This document shows positions 2,996 to 7,135 of a DNA stretch of 9,244 bases, in pieces. The stretch lies in the IMG/VR virus record IMGVR_UViG_3300026184_000250, positions 1-9,244 of that record; one strand, 5' to 3'. Both the position numbers and the translations under genes were made by a program. Each line of letters opens with the position of its first letter. Within the stretch, counting starts at the first letter, position 1. The notes under the pieces were generated by a model. That model saw only the letters and a list, made by a program, of their open reading frames with translations, did no database searches and was not told the origin of the DNA.

Positions 2996-4678
2996 CTACC
3001 ATTCATCAGGCCATCCAGCCGAGCCTGCATAACCTCTCTGTACTGACTGAGCATTTCTGCATACTATAGCAATAGCACCAGCGTCGTGATGGTCATCTGC
3101 ACCTACCACTAAGATTCCACTCTTGCTCATAGGATTTCTACGGATATTCTTACACTGGCTCCAGAATCGTATGTCCTGACAGTCTATATGTTCAAGGTGT
3201 CTACTAACCTCAGTAACCATATAAGGCTTAGTGGATAGATTAGTCTGCCAGCCTATTGCTTTTACAAGCTTACCAGTTCTTACATCCTCCCTATAGTATA
3301 GGTCAGGATAATCTCTAAGATGACTAACTATATCTAGATTATCTTCTGGAGCTATTACCGCATTATTGTAGTAATGTGCTACTTCCTTCATCAGCAGAGC
3401 CATTTCCCACTCATCATAAAAGCCTGCTAGTGTAGCACAATGCTGCATAACTGGAGGAATTTCCTTATCATCCTTACTTTTATAGCCCTCAAGAAAGTGC
3501 CATACATGACCTACTGACTCAGACGTTTTCCCTTTGCCTGGGTCTATAGATACTATATAACCTAAACTATCTTCTCTGTCACACCAGATATCTAATGTAG
3601 CAGATATAGTATCTTTAGTTCTTGAGTCAGTAGCTACTATATTCTTCTGGCTTTTAGCGGGTATACAGTAGTGTATCTTATCAACTATAACATCAGAGCT
3701 GTAAGCTTGGTCTCCTGCTACCAGAAAGCAATTCTCATCATCCTCAGGAAATTCCTGCTCAAATAGAAGAACAGTATCGCCACTTCTTCTAAGGCTAGCT
3801 ATCTCAGCTTTCTTATACCTTCTCCATCTAAGCTTAGCCATAGCATCCTGTTCAGACATATCATAGATGTCCATGAGAACCTGCATTAACAGTACTTCAT
3901 CTGACTGGATATTAGATAGTGGGTCTTTATTGTCTTCATCTAGGCAGAATGGGTCTTCAGCATACATAATATACTCTGGTTGAATATACCAAGGATAGAA
4001 GTGGTGCCTATAGACTGATTTGGCTACAGAAGTTCCTTCCTTAGCTGCTCTATACATCTCACAGAAATCATTATCTTCTCCATTAGGAGTAGATAATACT
4101 CTTATTTTAGTTCCAGGCTTAGCAGGAACTCTCTGAGCAGCTGATGCAAACACCAATTCATGCGTTCCTTCAAACCAGAATCCGTACTCATCTAGTAGTA
4201 GATTATGTATTGGCTCTCCCCTACCAATAGTATAGCTCCTAGAGCTAAAAATATACATGATAGAGTAGAATGGATGCTTAGTATCCTTAGTTACCCATGT
4301 TAACTCCTCAGCGCTTTTATGCTCAAGCTTAGGAATAGTAGGAATCCTTCTTTCCAGAAACTGATGAAACCGCTTGGCTTTGATGATAAGACGCTTAGCA
4401 TTGGTCTCATCATAGCTAATAATAACTGATACAGTTCCACTAAGAGTTATATTATCAAGATAGAAATCAGCTAGATGAAGGGATGTTGCCCCTACAGATG
4501 CTGGCTTAACATAGATATCTCTAAATGTAGAAGTCTGAAGCATATCTAGCTGAATAGGATTAAGGATGAACGGAACTAATCTTCGTTCCTTATCCTCTAT
4601 CTGGAGTAAGGACTCCATAGTGAGCCGTCTATCTGAGAATAAAGCTTCAGCAGCTTCATCCTGCGATATAGTCTGCAT
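2996..4678 (-). CDS. terL: Terminase large subunit, 560 aa
   Basis: Adenine-binding LNPIQ, deviant P-loop VKPASVGATS, Walker B LLLDEYGFW preceded by GRG, motif III STPNG, FEQEFPE linker, and RNase H-like acidic residues (SIDPGKG, APEDN, ADDHHD). SD AGGAG 5 nt before ATG. Confidence 0.93.
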   Translation of the reverse strand: MQTISQDEAAEALFSDRRLTMESLLQIEDKERRLVPFILNPIQLDMLQTSTFRDIYVKPASVGATSLHLADFYLDNITLSGTVSVIISYDETNAKRLIIKAKRFHQFLERRIPTIPKLEHKSAEELTWVTKDTKHPFYSIMYIFSSRSYTIGRGEPIHNLLLDEYGFWFEGTHELVFASAAQRVPAKPGTKIRVLSTPNGEDNDFCEMYRAAKEGTSVAKSVYRHHFYPWYIQPEYIMYAEDPFCLDEDNKDPLSNIQSDEVLLMQVLMDIYDMSEQDAMAKLRWRRYKKAEIASLRRSGDTVLLFEQEFPEDDENCFLVAGDQAYSSDVIVDKIHYCIPAKSQKNIVATDSRTKDTISATLDIWCDREDSLGYIVSIDPGKGKTSESVGHVWHFLEGYKSKDDKEIPPVMQHCATLAGFYDEWEMALLMKEVAHYYNNAVIAPEDNLDIVSHLRDYPDLYYREDVRTGKLVKAIGWQTNLSTKPYMVTEVSRHLEHIDCQDIRFWSQCKNIRRNPMSKSGILVVGADDHHDAGAIAIVCRNAQSVQRGYAGSAGWPDEW

Positions 4679-5057: not shown

Positions 5058-5239
5058 TATCTTTTTCTTAGCTTAAGTGTCACTGGAGTTCTAGAAGCAG
5101 GCTTGCTAGTACTCTGCCTCTTTCTAGTCTCCCTGCCTACACTTCTAGGTTCTTTCCTTCCAATACGACTAGCTTGAGCTCTTCTGATATTTCGTCTAGA
5201 TGCTTGAGCCTGCTTAGCTGTCCTTGCTCTTCTCACCAT
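5057..5239 (-). CDS. Small very basic Arg-rich protein, 60 aa; possible nucleic-acid-binding core protein
   Basis: 22 of 60 residues are R/K, with an internal AQASR duplication. It overlaps both neighbours in the operon. Function is inferred. Confidence 0.65.
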   Translation of the reverse strand: MVRRARTAKQAQASRRNIRRAQASRIGRKEPRSVGRETRKRQSTSKPASRTPVTLKLRKR

Positions 5240-5774
5240 CGGAAGTTACTCTTATCCTATCAGTCCTAGTTATCTCAACACTCCTAAGCTTATCCTGATT
5301 ATTGGTTATAAACTCAGAAAAGTTCCACCCATCACTGCTAATACCTCTCATAGCCTGCTCAAGGATTTGTAGCTGTTGAGGTGTGTATGCAGTACGGAGT
5401 TTTAGGAGATATTCATGCTCCTGTCTAGTCATTATCTCCTCTTCTATAGATTTCCTGAGGATTCTATAATCTTTCTCAAGAACTAGCTTGAAGTTGCGAA
5501 AGAAGTCTAGCTCTATATATTCCTTGCTGAGCTCCTTCCTTATTTCGGGTATCCTTAGTTCAAGCTGGCTAAATGCAGTATCCCTACGTTGCTCATCTAG
5601 CCAGGTCATATCTAGACCCAGCATATATAGAGCTTCTTCGATAGTAATTCCACATGCTAGATAGCCAAAGTATTTAGCTCTATTATCATCTCTACGCCAG
5701 GGAAGGAGAGTCTGAGCTATAGCAACTTCAGATGGAGTATCTGAGTTAGGAGGCACAGTGGTAGGTTCTATCAT
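5214..5774 (-). CDS. Terminase small subunit candidate (N-terminal HTH), 186 aa
   Basis: First gene of the packaging operon. HTH-like segment CGITIEEALYMLGLDMTWLDEQRRDTAF is followed by helices. The ORF-track start at 5792 falls inside the promoter spacer, so ATG 5774 is preferred. Confidence 0.6.
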   Translation of the reverse strand: MIEPTTVPPNSDTPSEVAIAQTLLPWRRDDNRAKYFGYLACGITIEEALYMLGLDMTWLDEQRRDTAFSQLELRIPEIRKELSKEYIELDFFRNFKLVLEKDYRILRKSIEEEIMTRQEHEYLLKLRTAYTPQQLQILEQAMRGISSDGWNFSEFITNNQDKLRSVEITRTDRIRVTSDGEKSKDS

Positions 5775-5782
5775 ATCAGTAT

Positions 5783-5811
5783 AGTATAACATTGTGTACT
5801 AGTGTTGTCAA
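5783..5811 (-). promoter_or_regulatory. Sigma70/sigmaA promoter for the packaging operon, leaderless or nearly so
   Basis: TTGACA (5811-5806), 17-nt spacer, TGn-TATACT (5788-5783). ATG follows 8 nt later with no SD. Confidence 0.8.
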
Positions 5812-5858: not shown

Positions 5859-5887
5859 TTGACAACTATATCCTGATATGATATAAT
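5859..5887 (+). promoter_or_regulatory. Consensus sigma70/sigmaA promoter, leaderless
   Basis: TTGACA (5859-5864), 17-nt spacer, TGn-TATAAT (5882-5887). ATG 5894 is 6 nt downstream. Confidence 0.88.
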
Positions 5888-5893
5888 ATGGTT

Positions 5894-6088
5894 ATGAAGT
5901 GTGAGATATGTGGAAGAAGTAATCTAACTGCTAGAGAGCTAGCAGTACATAGAAAGCTTTTCCATAATGAACAGCCTCAGCAGATTAGTCCTATGTCTGC
6001 TAAGGTATGTCCTGACTGTGGAGCTGCACTAGTTCTTCAGGAAGGTTGTGAGTATTGTAGCATATGTGGATACAGTAAATGTGGATAA
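5894..6088 (+). CDS. 64-aa double zinc-finger protein (C2H2 plus NrdJ-tail-like Zn ribbon)
   Basis: CEIC-x12-H-x4-H, then CPDCGAALVLQEGCEYCSICGYSKCG. Start placed at the expected transcription start. Confidence 0.8.
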   Translation: MKCEICGRSNLTARELAVHRKLFHNEQPQQISPMSAKVCPDCGAALVLQEGCEYCSICGYSKCG

Positions 6089-6153: not shown

Positions 6154-6336
6154 ATGTTAGCTAAGTTAATATGCAAGTTATTCAAGCATAGATGGCTCTT
6201 TGAAATAGGAGTAATAGACCCGCCCAGTAAGAGCATCTGTCATATACCTAGTAGTGAAATTAAACTCATATTCTGTACTAGGTGTGGAAAGATTATATAT
6301 GATAGAGAGGAGATACTAAAATTGACATCTGGCTAA
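6154..6336 (+). CDS. DUF1660-like small phage Zn-binding protein, 60 aa
   Basis: LICKLFKHRW...CTRCG pattern typical of DUF1660-like prophage proteins. Confidence 0.65.
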   Translation: MLAKLICKLFKHRWLFEIGVIDPPSKSICHIPSSEIKLIFCTRCGKIIYDREEILKLTSG

Positions 6337-6791
6337 CTGTCTGTCGTAAAACTGTTCCTAAGTGTGCTTACTGCGGAGAACCTATACACTTGGGGGAGAT
6401 AATGGTAGCTGGCAGGATATGGAAGACTAGAGATGGAAAGGTAAGGAGATTTGTAAAGAACTTAAGATGGCACGGACAGAAGATAGTAAACCCAGAAGAG
6501 CCTCCAATATGCTGCTGGCTAGAAGCAGGTCTAGAGTATCTACGAACTCACCCAAAAGAAGAGACAAGAGGAAGAAAGCAGCTTCAGCTAACAAAAGCAC
6601 AAAAAATAGAAAGGTCAAAGATATCAAGACAAAGGGCAAGGTTAGTCCAAAAACTAAAGACACTAATGGAAGTTCCCCTAGCAAATCAGGAGCAAAAGGA
6701 TATAAACGATATAATAAAGATAGGAAGCCAGATAGAACAGTTGAAAGAGAGGATAATACCACTAGGAGGACTGCCTCCGAACTGGGAATAG
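6321..6791 (+). CDS. Zn-finger plus coiled-coil protein, about 156 aa, probable ATT start
   Basis: The frame is open from 6306. GAGGAG (6307-6312) lies 8 nt before ATT 6321. The extension beyond TTG 6390 supplies RKTVPKCAYCGEPIHLGE, completing a CxxC...WH...C Zn site. Confidence 0.65.
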   Translation: MDIWLTVCRKTVPKCAYCGEPIHLGEIMVAGRIWKTRDGKVRRFVKNLRWHGQKIVNPEEPPICCWLEAGLEYLRTHPKEETRGRKQLQLTKAQKIERSKISRQRARLVQKLKTLMEVPLANQEQKDINDIIKIGSQIEQLKERIIPLGGLPPNWE

Positions 6792-7135
6792 AATGGATAG
6801 GAGATTATTGCCCAGACAATAAACCCCATAACTTAATATGTATATATGAGTTGCATGGCGGAAGCTTATTTAGGTGTAGTAATTGTAGAAAGTATATATG
6901 GCTTCCTACATTTATTAAGGATGCTGCTAAGCTCGATAGTCTCATTGACAGCTATGGAACTACTACTGGGTATTGCAAGTATCTTGATACTAATAGAAGT
7001 GCTAAGATGCTAGTAGCTAAGCTGCAAGACCTATGGTATGCTAGAGCTAAGATTAAGGATGATAGGAAGTTTACTAAATTGGTAGTTAGAACTATGGAAG
7101 ACAGCGAGTATGATAGGAGGAACAATGGCACTTAA
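6782..7135 (+). CDS. Hypothetical Zn-binding protein, about 117 aa, start uncertain
   Basis: The C-terminal part of ORF 6467..7135 looks coding (CPDNKPH...CSNC). AGGAGG 6764-6769 precedes in-frame CTG 6782 and ATA 6788, which overlap the upstream stop. Confidence 0.55.
   Translation: MGIEWIGDYCPDNKPHNLICIYELHGGSLFRCSNCRKYIWLPTFIKDAAKLDSLIDSYGTTTGYCKYLDTNRSAKMLVAKLQDLWYARAKIKDDRKFTKLVVRTMEDSEYDRRNNGT

What the first reader, a model, noticed from the sequence alone, without database searches (positions are those of the whole stretch)
5894..6088. Stand-alone class II RNR (NrdJ) C-terminal Zn ribbon fused to a C2H2 finger
Seen: CPDCG-x5-QEGC-x2-C-x2-CGYSKCG at the C-terminus and a classical C2H2 finger at the N-terminus. 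Known: CPxCG...EGCxxCxxCGYSKC is the typical tail of many B12-dependent NrdJ enzymes, whose terminal cysteines shuttle reducing equivalents. Inference: a mimic or modulator of host NrdJ or thioredoxin, or a redox-sensing DNA binder, expressed first from a consensus promoter.
Basis: partly seen in the sequence, partly recalled or inferred. Interest (0 to 1): 0.6.

Follow-up and report, generated by a model that had tools for sequence, protein, structure and literature searches.

The report
Free-standing NrdJ redox finger in phage
A soil phage encodes a 64-residue protein made of a C2H2 zinc finger plus a detached copy of the six-cysteine zinc finger that normally ends B12-dependent ribonucleotide reductases, although complete relatives of this phage encode no reductase, so it most likely acts on the host enzyme's electron supply.

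Summary
ORF 5894-6088 (+) encodes 64 aa: an N-terminal C-x2-C-x12-H-x4-H finger, a floppy linker, and a C-terminal C-x2-C-x9-C-x2-C-x2-C-x4-C-G module.

The tail is specifically NrdJ-like. It matches NCBIfam PRK08665 at E 1e-8 over the last 39 profile positions, while generic zinc ribbons score E 0.004 or worse. Every scanned cellular locus that was not cut by a contig end carries the motif at the very end of an open frame, mostly 750-1800 aa.

The protein belongs to a conserved family of small proteins (28 clusters at E<=1e-10). Members sit in ~42-44 kb phages. Four near-complete relatives carry the gene, and no RNR catalytic domain was found in them (both profiles in three, the NrdJ profile only in the fourth). 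No thioredoxin was found either. Four other near-complete relatives lack the gene.

Other phages hold the tail with other N-termini, or hold the whole cysteine-rich domain alone.

Here the gene follows a perfect sigma-70 promoter as a probable leaderless mRNA.

Best reading (inferred): a trans-acting copy of NrdJ's redox finger that plugs into the host class II RNR redox relay. Whether it boosts or blocks the enzyme is unknown. The host is also unknown. This is a new variant of a known module.

The parts
5859..5887 (+). Sigma-70-type promoter: TTGACA (5859-5864), 17-nt spacer, TG extension (5879-5880), TATAAT (5882-5887)
   Evidence: 12 of 12 hexamer matches plus TG; the same -35 and -10 boxes with a different spacer in relatives L144/L007, and a similar arrangement in L146.
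5894..6088 (+). CDS of the 64-aa C2H2 + NrdJ-tail protein, stop included. ATG 5894 lies 6 nt after the -10 box with no Shine-Dalgarno sequence, so the mRNA is probably leaderless.
   Evidence: Most of the 15 aligned homologues start at the equivalent MKC. The database copy P0002 is 64 aa.
5894..5965 (+). N-terminal C2H2 finger, residues 1-24 (C3, C6, H19, H24)
   Evidence: Pattern read directly from the sequence. C3, C6, R8, E15, L16 and H19 are invariant and H24 nearly so. Helix 13-23 at pLDDT ~86. Weak matches to SALL4 fingers.
5966..6007 (+). Variable Q-rich linker, residues 25-38
   Evidence: Linker length varies from 5 to 25 residues across the family. pLDDT is 65-68.
6008..6085 (+). NrdJ-type six-cysteine zinc finger, residues 39-64. 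By analogy with S. nassauensis NrdJd, the predicted Zn ligands are C39, C42, C55 and C58, and the predicted redox pair is C52 + C63.
   Evidence: profile matches. (same conserved positions as 79 cellular NrdJ tails). (beta ribbon, pLDDT ~86). Cysteine roles are taken from PMC5704485 by alignment and were not tested here.
5783..5811 (-). Divergent promoter for the leftward operon that holds the large-terminase gene (TTGACA-17 nt-TATACT with TG). The next in-frame ATG at 5774 lies 8 nt after its -10 box.
   Evidence: 11 of 12 plus TG. ORF 5214..5792. This part is context for the regulatory region shared with the finding.

Best explanation
The gene encodes a soluble, trans-acting copy of the terminal redox zinc finger of class II ribonucleotide reductase (NrdJ), tethered by a flexible linker to a small C2H2 finger.

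In NrdJ this finger binds one Zn with four cysteines. That holds the other two cysteines together as a dithiol/disulfide pair, which carries electrons from a still unidentified reductant into the active site. It can also do so in trans: between subunits, or as the separate NrdJb chain.

No RNR or thioredoxin was found in the near-complete relatives that carry the gene. So the protein, made from the first early transcript, most likely plugs into the host's NrdJ redox relay. It would be reduced by the host reductant and then deliver electrons to, or compete for, the NrdJ active site.

My preferred direction is an extra diffusible electron shuttle that raises dNTP supply. The C2H2 finger would serve as a lineage-specific scaffold or docking module.

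Shown: homology, architecture, conservation pattern, genomic context, promoter. Inferred: Zn binding, redox activity, the target and the direction of the effect.
For: 1. The match is specific to the NrdJ C-terminus. In the cellular-genome scan, 449 of 600 pattern stretches were confirmed as relatives. In the 79 loci scanned, the motif always sits at the very end of an open frame. Most frames are 750-1800 aa, four uncut ones are 127-512 aa, and the rest are cut by contig ends.

2. The same positions are conserved in the phage family and in 79 cellular NrdJ tails. These include non-ligand residues (E, G before Cys3; G-[YF]-S-[KE] before the last Cys) and the end of the chain 0-1 residues after the last Cys. 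All six cysteines are invariant in 15 homologues. The tail pattern is kept in 137 of 138 short database hits. Two of those cysteines are not needed for Zn binding, so a redox role is probably retained.

3. There is precedent for action in trans: the NrdJb subunit (PMC4520616) and inter-subunit electron transfer (PMC5704485).

4. Four near-complete relatives carry the gene (G001, G002, G004, G007). The NrdJ profile NF006417 found only the small tail ORF in all four. The barrel model PF02867 was blank in the three tested, G001, G002 and G004. No thioredoxin was found in any of the four. G002 does encode dCMP deaminase, MazG and a family A DNA polymerase.

5. Detached copies recur in other phages. 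One tail with a different N-terminus sits next to a DNA ligase. Another is a 75-aa form (L152). The whole CRD stands alone in complete 205-kb and 76-kb phages without any RNR barrel.

6. Co-fold test with a phage NrdJ core (P0013, residues 1-650): median ipSAE 0.37 (runs 0.37, 0.50, 0.35), best of 3 controls 0.00, verdict 'weak support'. The mark was reached by 51 of 78 solved complexes and 2 of 108 mismatched pairs. At 0.60 or under, it was reached by only 5 of those 78 solved complexes and by all 4 mismatches that passed (of 180). The runs agree in at least 63% of contacts, and partner pLDDT is at least 60.
Against: - The host is unknown, so it is not shown that it has a finger-bearing NrdJ. 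The one MAG that holds a related viral contig has a monomeric-type NrdJ with a simple C-x4-C end, although that binning may be wrong.
- The protein lacks the IscU-like/TSCPD domain that precedes the finger in long NrdJ tails and in NrdJb.
- In vitro mixing of a CRD-less NrdJd with a separately expressed CRD gave no activity (PMC5704485). That CRD did aggregate.
- The gene is accessory. Four of eight near-complete relatives lack it.
- The co-fold support is weak, and it used a proxy NrdJ from another phage.
- No expression data were found.
- The direction of the effect (boost or block) rests on argument only.
Confidence: 0.4

Rival explanations
1. Decoy or inhibitor. The free finger competes with the host NrdJ's own tail for the active site, or soaks up the host reductant. 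This would shut down host dNTP synthesis or divert reducing power, in the manner of small early phage proteins that block host enzymes.
For: The homology and conservation evidence is the same as for the main explanation. The gene is first behind a consensus promoter, a typical place for host take-over genes. From my own knowledge, C-terminal peptide mimics are classic inhibitors of class I RNR. The co-fold support is weak.
Against: No RNR was found in the relatives that carry the gene, so blocking the host enzyme would cut the phage's own dNTP supply unless it lives on degraded host DNA. A pure blocker would not need both redox cysteines, yet all six are invariant. A tethered cis tail is hard to out-compete.
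Confidence: 0.15
2. Early regulator or adaptor unrelated to RNR. The two zinc modules bind DNA, RNA or a host protein such as RNA polymerase, and the NrdJ-derived ribbon has been co-opted merely as a stable zinc knuckle.
For: The gene lies beside the divergent promoter region. The N-terminal module looks like DNA-binding C2H2 fingers. The ribbon superposes on TFS/RPC10-type ribbons. Atlas neighbours are C2H2 and 'transcriptional regulator' clusters at a score of ~0.90, which is a lead only.
Against: Net charge across 35 family members runs from -6 to +4 with no conserved basic surface. In several relatives the gene sits behind other genes with its own Shine-Dalgarno sequence, not at the promoter. 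A co-opted structural ribbon would be free to lose the two non-ligand cysteines and the strict chain end after the last Cys, yet both are kept. Other lineages keep the tail but swap the N-terminus.
Confidence: 0.25
3. General thiol-disulfide carrier aimed at another client. It would capture a host thioredoxin-like protein as a substrate mimic, for example to serve the phage's family A DNA polymerase, or it would sense the redox state of the cell.
For: The module is the part of NrdJ that a reductant must recognise (PMC5704485). The phages encode a family A polymerase and no thioredoxin. From my own knowledge, T7 polymerase recruits host thioredoxin.
Against: There is no direct evidence. Thioredoxins and glutaredoxin did not reduce the S. 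nassauensis finger. The finger's only documented client is the NrdJ active site.
Confidence: 0.1
4. Dead remnant of a captured nrdJ 3' end, or a chance cysteine-rich ORF.
For: Many short database hits are evidently 3' fragments of nrdJ genes.
Against: Full-length homologues at 48-69% identity keep 18 invariant columns in both modules and a variable linker. The gene has its own consensus promoter or Shine-Dalgarno sequence. It occurs in complete genomes in which no nrdJ was found. Profile E-values are 1e-8 to 1e-11.
Confidence: 0.03

Closest known systems
C-terminal zinc finger of the cysteine-rich domain (CRD) of class II RNR, e.g. Stackebrandtia nassauensis NrdJd (Loderer et al. 2017, PMC5704485; Burnim et al. 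2022, PMC9669993)
   Same: Six cysteines in the same order and nearly the same spacing (C-x2-C-x9-C-x2-C-x2-C-x4 or x5-C). The same conserved non-ligand residues. The same position at the extreme C-terminus. A significant profile match.
   Different: It is not attached to any RNR catalytic barrel, and no RNR was found in the relatives' genomes. It is preceded by a C2H2 finger instead of the IscU-like/TSCPD domain or the barrel. It is phage-encoded and 64 aa in all.
NrdJb, the separate CRD subunit of the split class II RNR of Pseudomonas aeruginosa (Crona et al. 2015, PMC4520616)
   Same: The redox finger is on a polypeptide separate from the catalytic chain, which shows the module can work in trans.
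   Different: NrdJb carries the IscU-like domain plus the finger and pairs with NrdJa in a (NrdJa-NrdJb)2 enzyme (PMC4520616, PMC9669993). Here there is no IscU-like/TSCPD domain and no nrdJa was found in the phage group. True NrdJb-like stand-alone CRDs do occur in other phages (L153, L157).
Phage-encoded redoxins that feed RNR (T4 NrdC thioredoxin, NrdH-type glutaredoxin-like proteins). This comparison rests on my own knowledge.
   Same: Small phage-encoded thiol-disulfide proteins thought to keep ribonucleotide reduction running during infection.
   Different: The fold is unrelated (thioredoxin fold versus zinc ribbon). Those proteins usually accompany a phage RNR. They reduce the RNR tail, whereas this protein is itself a copy of the tail.
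Generic zinc ribbons (TFS/TFIIS, RPC10, TFIIB) and classical C2H2 fingers
   Same: The overall knuckle/ribbon fold (7oqy_Y, rmsd 1.1 A over 28 residues) and the C2H2 pattern.
   Different: All scores are below family thresholds. These ribbons lack the two extra cysteines and the conserved EGC...CG[YF]S[KE]C signature.

Membership tests
NrdJ CRD zinc-finger module | Array of six cysteines, C-x2-C-x9-C-x2-C-x2-C-x4/5-C | tested here: met
   Read directly from the sequence. The spacing equals that of 79 cellular NrdJ tails. S. nassauensis has x5 in the last gap.
NrdJ CRD zinc-finger module | Significant profile match to the extreme C-terminus of B12-dependent RNR | tested here: met
   NF006417 positions 721-759 of 759, E 1e-8 and 7e-11. 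phrog_23565, E 3.4e-7.
NrdJ CRD zinc-finger module | Lies at the very end of the chain (0-3 residues after the last Cys) | tested here: met
   C63-G64-stop. The same holds in 15 homologues and in cellular tails.
NrdJ CRD zinc-finger module | One Zn bound by four Cys, plus a redox-active pair that reduces the active site | not testable with these tools
   Only inferred by alignment to the mutational data of PMC5704485. The AF2 model shows a ribbon, but no coordinates were available to measure Cys distances.
Class II RNR (NrdJ) enzyme | Ten-stranded RNR barrel with catalytic cysteines and a B12 site | tested here: not met
   Absent from the protein and from the window. NF006417 found only the small tail ORF in near-complete relatives G001, G002, G004 and G007. 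PF02867 was blank in G001, G002 and G004. The controls matched in 12-13 of 14 known genomes.
NrdJb (split RNR subunit) | IscU-like / TSCPD domain preceding the finger | tested here: not met
   No PF12637 match even at E<=10. The same model hits the stand-alone CRDs L153 and L157 at 1e-18 to 1e-21.
NrdJb (split RNR subunit) | Paired with an nrdJa catalytic gene | tested here: not met
   No nrdJa in the window or in the near-complete relatives tested.
Classical C2H2 zinc finger | C-x2-4-C-x12-H-x3-5-H with a beta-beta-alpha fold | tested here: inconclusive
   The pattern is exact and conserved, and a helix is predicted at 13-23. Pfam zf-C2H2 and zf-C2H2_4 score E 1.1 and 0.13, below their cut-offs. 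PDB profile hits to SALL4 fingers are at E ~1e-3.
MqsA/YgiT-type zinc finger antitoxin | CxxCG...CxxCG finger followed by an HTH domain | tested here: not met
   PF15731 at E 0.008 and TIGR03830 at E 0.007, far below their cut-offs. The 64-aa chain has no room for an HTH.

The most novel reading that the evidence does not exclude
Detached NrdJ redox fingers are a previously unrecognised class of viral (and perhaps cellular) mini-proteins that act on class II RNR in trans. The C2H2-fused family seen here, other short forms, and whole CRDs in RNR-less phages would all belong to it. They could be diffusible electron shuttles or natural inhibitors. Because they are small and naturally free-standing, they could serve as bait to trap the long-sought physiological reductant of finger-bearing NrdJ enzymes.
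Probability: 0.3. Interest if true: 0.8.

Novelty: new variant of a known kind. Interest (0 to 1): 0.6.

Why it matters
Most class II RNRs end in this six-cysteine finger. Its native electron donor is still unknown, because thioredoxins and glutaredoxin failed in vitro (PMC5704485). The isolated CRD aggregates when expressed, which has blocked biochemistry.

Nature appears to have made a minimal, free-standing version here: 64 aa, conserved across many phages, and found in genomes where no RNR was detected. If it exchanges electrons with host NrdJ, it would be a new kind of viral auxiliary metabolic protein, a copy of an enzyme's own redox arm rather than a redoxin. It would also be a ready-made tool for trapping the reductant and for dissecting tail-to-active-site transfer. 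If it instead blocks the enzyme, it would be a natural protein inhibitor of class II RNR.

Either way, it shows that zinc-finger tails of RNR circulate as independent genes.

Tried and rejected
- **Close phage relatives.** Megablast of the whole window against GenBank phages found nothing. tblastn with the 589-aa ORF found nothing. The large terminase finds only ~25% identical terminases of assorted bacterial podophages. There is no cultured relative and no host hint.
- **Fold search.** Foldseek of the AF2 model against the PDB gave no hit at E<=0.001, only generic ribbons and C2H2 arrays. No NrdJ finger has been solved.
- **Word search with P0011** for other short tails produced only 4 candidates. 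The exhaustive search was therefore used once.
- **ESM Atlas look-alikes** were generic C2H2 clusters at 0.90, which is a lead only.
- **Host hunt.**
  - No tRNA genes in the relatives.
  - One related viral contig (L007) is binned in an archaeal MAG, G017. That MAG has ribosomal protein S8e, an actin homologue and a monomeric-type NrdJ without the finger.
  - A whole 43.8-kb relative is contig 1 of another MAG of the same phylum. That MAG gave no NrdJ-profile match at all, so this relative also lacks the small gene.
  - There are no further cases in 153 other genomes of G017's order or in 301 genomes of a bacterial phylum.
  - Against an archaeal host: the -35 and -10 boxes are conserved while the spacer differs, and the phages encode a family A polymerase.
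  - I treat the binning as unproven and the host as unknown.
- **Sequencing runs.** One DNA run (soil metagenome, probably the source) and no RNA run were found.
- **TSCPD.** I first assumed that the name-giving motif of the Pfam TSCPD domain is the CPDCG of the finger. This is wrong: the S-C-P-D-A-I-type motif lies upstream in the IscU-like domain.
- **Frameshift idea.** I considered that ORF 6390-6791 and ORF 6467-7135 are one frameshifted gene. I rejected it because both frames are conserved separately.

Full report
**What the window is.**
The 9244-base window is a whole IMG/VR viral contig, estimated about 21% complete. It comes from a soil metagenome.

A leftward block holds a large terminase (2996-4678, phrog_2 at E 3.5e-13). 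It also holds unannotated ORFs that are probably structural or packaging genes. A rightward block of small early-type genes starts at the finding.

The two blocks are separated by a 95-nt region with two divergent near-consensus sigma-70 promoters.

**The observation.**
ORF 5894-6088 (+) encodes 64 aa. It has three parts:
- an N-terminal C3-x2-C6-x12-H19-x4-H24 finger;
- a 14-residue linker;
- a C-terminal CPDCG-x5-QEGC-x2-C-x2-CGYSKCG module that ends one residue before the stop.

The promoter at 5859-5887 is TTGACA, a 17-nt spacer that ends in a TG extension, then TATAAT, scoring 12 of 12. ATG 5894 follows the -10 box by 6 nt, and there is no Shine-Dalgarno sequence. The transcript is therefore probably leaderless, and the in-frame ATG at 5888 is unlikely to be used.

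Relatives L144/L007 keep both hexamers and the ATG distance while the spacer differs. That is the signature of selection on a sigma-70 promoter. L146 has a similar arrangement. In other relatives the gene sits behind another gene and has its own AGGAG-type ribosome-binding site.

**Is the tail really NrdJ-like?**
Yes, on three lines of evidence.
- The best family match is NCBIfam NF006417 (vitamin B12-dependent RNR). The last 39 residues align to profile positions 721-759 of 759 at E 1e-8, or 7e-11 against the window alone.
- PHROG 23565 'ribonucleotide reductase' matches at E 3.4e-7.
- Generic ribbons (TFS4, Zn_Ribbon_1, TFIIB) reach only E 0.004 or worse.

A scan of 185,579 species genomes for the CPDCG-type pattern gave 449 confirmed stretches. 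The 80 best loci were kept, and 79 of them were scanned. In every one the motif is the very end of an open frame. Most of those frames are 750-1800 aa, the size of NrdJ with or without inteins. Four uncut frames are shorter (127-512 aa), and the rest are cut by contig ends. The genomes are Gemmatimonadota, Omnitrophota, Planctomycetia, Thermoplasmatales and others.

The closest tails share 17-18 of 25 residues and come from Omnitrophota and Planctomycetia.

Position by position, the phage family and the cellular tails conserve the same residues:
- all six Cys;
- P-D after Cys1 and G after Cys2;
- L at +4;
- E-G before Cys3;
- G-[YF]-S-[KE] before Cys6;
- then G or the chain end.

Positions 1-8 of the cellular set are biased by the search pattern. 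Positions 12-25 are not.

Loderer et al. (PMC5704485) showed for S. nassauensis NrdJd that Cys920, 923, 936 and 939 hold a Zn. Cys933 and 945 are the likely redox pair that re-reduces the active site. All six are needed for turnover with TCEP, transfer can occur between subunits, and thioredoxins and glutaredoxin are not the donor.

By alignment, the phage protein's Zn ligands are C39, C42, C55 and C58, and the redox pair is C52 + C63.

**The family.**
A word search found ten stand-alone homologues of 56-86 aa. Viral-contig scans added more.

Fifteen full-length members at 48-69% identity keep 18 invariant columns, split between the two zinc modules. Their linkers differ in length and sequence.

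I used the exhaustive profile search once, because the family scans left the function open and the word search was blind to other lengths. It returned 2600 hits at E<=0.001 and 28 at E<=1e-10.

Among the best 150 rows:
- about 20-30 are C2H2 + tail proteins of 56-99 aa;
- 20 carry the S-C-x-D-A-I-type motif of the IscU-like/TSCPD domain, so they are nrdJ 3' fragments or NrdJb-like;
- about 100 are short proteins with unrelated N-termini.

Part of that last group is clearly mis-called 3' ends of nrdJ genes, for example those with Gemmatimonadota-like linkers. I therefore do not count them as independent genes. At least some are genuine: a 47-aa example lies between parA-like and blaI-like genes.

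Of the 138 short hits, 137 keep the full six-Cys pattern.

**Genomic context.**
The terminase retrieves 42 related viral contigs, including eight near-complete genomes of 42-44.5 kb, several with terminal repeats.
- Four of them (G001, G002, G004, G007) carry the gene. Four (G003, G005, G006, G008) do not, so it is accessory.
- The NrdJ profile found only the small tail ORF in the four carriers and nothing in the other four.
- The barrel model PF02867 was blank in G001, G002 and G004. Its controls matched in 12 of 14 known genomes.
- No thioredoxin was found in the four carriers.
- G002 encodes a family A DNA polymerase with exonuclease, dCMP deaminase, MazG, AAA_25 and AAA_24 ATPases, a DNA methylase and HNH. 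This is a T7-like lytic style with dNTP-pool genes but no reductase.

**Detached fingers elsewhere.**
- P0011/P0012 carry the same tail on a different, non-C2H2 N-terminus. They lie directly after a DNA ligase gene in a replication/recombination module of another phage type.
- L152 encodes a 75-aa form with yet another N-terminus.
- L153 (157 aa) and L157 (175 aa) are whole CRDs, TSCPD plus finger. They sit in complete 205-kb and 76-kb phages that also lack any RNR barrel.

In a sample of viral contigs with EGCxxCxxCGYSKC, 39 of 52 tails belong to ORFs of at least 450 aa, which are true phage NrdJ genes. A few are minis and several are CRD-only.

The split NrdJa/NrdJb enzyme of Pseudomonas shows that a CRD on its own chain works in trans (PMC4520616). 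Burnim et al. describe the CRD as an IscU-like domain plus zinc finger (PMC9669993). I found no paper describing detached fingers in phages. Those full-text searches cover open-access papers only.

**Structure and binding tests.**
AlphaFold2 with the 15-sequence alignment gives mean pLDDT 79.7. It predicts a helix at 13-23 in the N-finger, a low-confidence linker, and a three-stranded ribbon at 38-64. The pTM of 0.35 fits two beads on a string.

The co-fold test paired the protein with a phage NrdJ (P0013 from L003) whose own finger had been cut off. That finger also ends in CGYSKCG.
- Median ipSAE was 0.37 (runs 0.37, 0.50, 0.35) against 0.00 for the best of three controls. The verdict was 'weak support'.
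- The mark was reached by 51 of 78 solved complexes and 2 of 108 mismatched pairs.
- At 0.60 or under, it was reached by only 5 of those 78 solved complexes and by all 4 mismatches that passed (of 180).
- The runs agree in at least 63% of contacts, and the partner's pLDDT is at least 60.

I count this as a small nudge, not a demonstration.

**Interpretation.**
Three features are kept in every detached copy, while the N-terminal partner is swapped between lineages:
- the two cysteines that Zn binding does not need;
- the neighbouring non-ligand residues;
- the free chain end.

This argues that the finger still does what it does in NrdJ, namely dithiol-disulfide exchange with the NrdJ active site and with its reductant.

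No RNR or redoxin was found in the phages that carry the gene, so the partners must be the host's. I therefore favour a trans-acting redox finger that plugs into the host class II RNR relay (confidence 0.4 for the relay as target). Within that, I lean towards a diffusible shuttle that adds reducing flux at the onset of infection. A decoy or inhibitor is the second option.

The main rival is an RNR-unrelated zinc-finger regulator or adaptor (0.25). The variable near-neutral charge, the variable gene position and the retained redox cysteines speak against it, but nothing excludes it.

**Caveats.**
- The host is unknown. Two related viral contigs are binned in archaeal MAGs of one phylum. One of those MAGs has a monomeric-type NrdJ without the finger. 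The sigma-70 promoters and the family A polymerase point to a bacterium, and binning of free viral contigs is unreliable.
- No expression data exist.
- All biochemical roles are inferred.

**Verdict.**
This is a new variant of a known module: the NrdJ CRD zinc finger, here detached, minimal, fused to a C2H2 finger, and carried by phages in which no RNR was found. It is of moderate to high interest because it offers a natural, small, free-standing handle on an unsolved step of class II RNR chemistry.

Noticed in passing
window 6390-6791 (+) and 6467-7135 (+): Two ORFs (133 aa and 222 aa) overlap out of frame by about 325 nt. Both are conserved by tblastn in 12 related phages (46-66% and 29-52% identity). 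The second frame stays open from its first residues. This is a candidate conserved overprinted gene pair. The overlapped half of the 222-aa protein is basic and low-complexity.
   Followed up: partly
window 5772-5811 (-) and 5859-5896 (+): Both divergent promoters are followed by an ATG 6-8 nt after the -10 box (5774 on the minus strand, 5894 on the plus strand). This suggests that both early and late operons start with leaderless mRNAs. The annotated start at 5792 of the leftward ORF lies inside its own promoter spacer.
   Followed up: partly
window 6154-6336 (+): The next gene encodes a 60-aa protein with a C-x12-C-x2-C arrangement. It scores just under threshold for DUF1660 'prophage protein' (21.1 vs 21.4 bits) and matches phrog_2670. 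A related gene sits upstream of the finger gene in relative L145.
   Followed up: no
L153:3674-4144 (+) and L157:3653-4177 (+): Complete 205-kb and 76-kb phages with terminal repeats encode a whole stand-alone NrdJ cysteine-rich domain (TSCPD plus six-Cys finger, 157 and 175 aa). Neither genome has an RNR barrel. These are NrdJb-like genes without an nrdJa.
   Followed up: partly
L139:8268-8510 (+), L141:4497-4757 (+): An 80-86 aa protein with the same finger but a non-C2H2 N-terminus lies directly after a DNA ligase gene and before a PD-(D/E)XK nuclease, in a different phage-like replication module. The contigs are labelled Ignavibacteria MAG.
   Followed up: partly
L162:1814-3340 (-) in genome G017; G270 contig C1: The MAG that holds viral contig L007 is archaeal (ribosomal protein S8e). 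It encodes a 508-aa actin-family protein (Pfam Actin, E 2e-70) fused to C-terminal zinc ribbons. A second MAG of the same phylum has a whole 43.8-kb relative of this phage as its contig 1. Whether this is mis-binning or a real archaeal host was not resolved.
   Followed up: partly
proteins P0082 and P0007/P0010/P0023: P0082 (102 aa) carries two NrdJ-type fingers in tandem. Three C2H2 + tail members have C-x2-C-x1-C instead of C-x2-C-x2-C in the second half of the finger.
   Followed up: no
genome G002 (L164:16956-17930), about 35,958-36,928 of the 41.9-kb relative: A stretch of about 1 kb after the 617-aa ORF has no ORF of 50 aa or more in my crude ORF call of the complete relative. It was not examined for RNA genes or repeats.
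   Followed up: no
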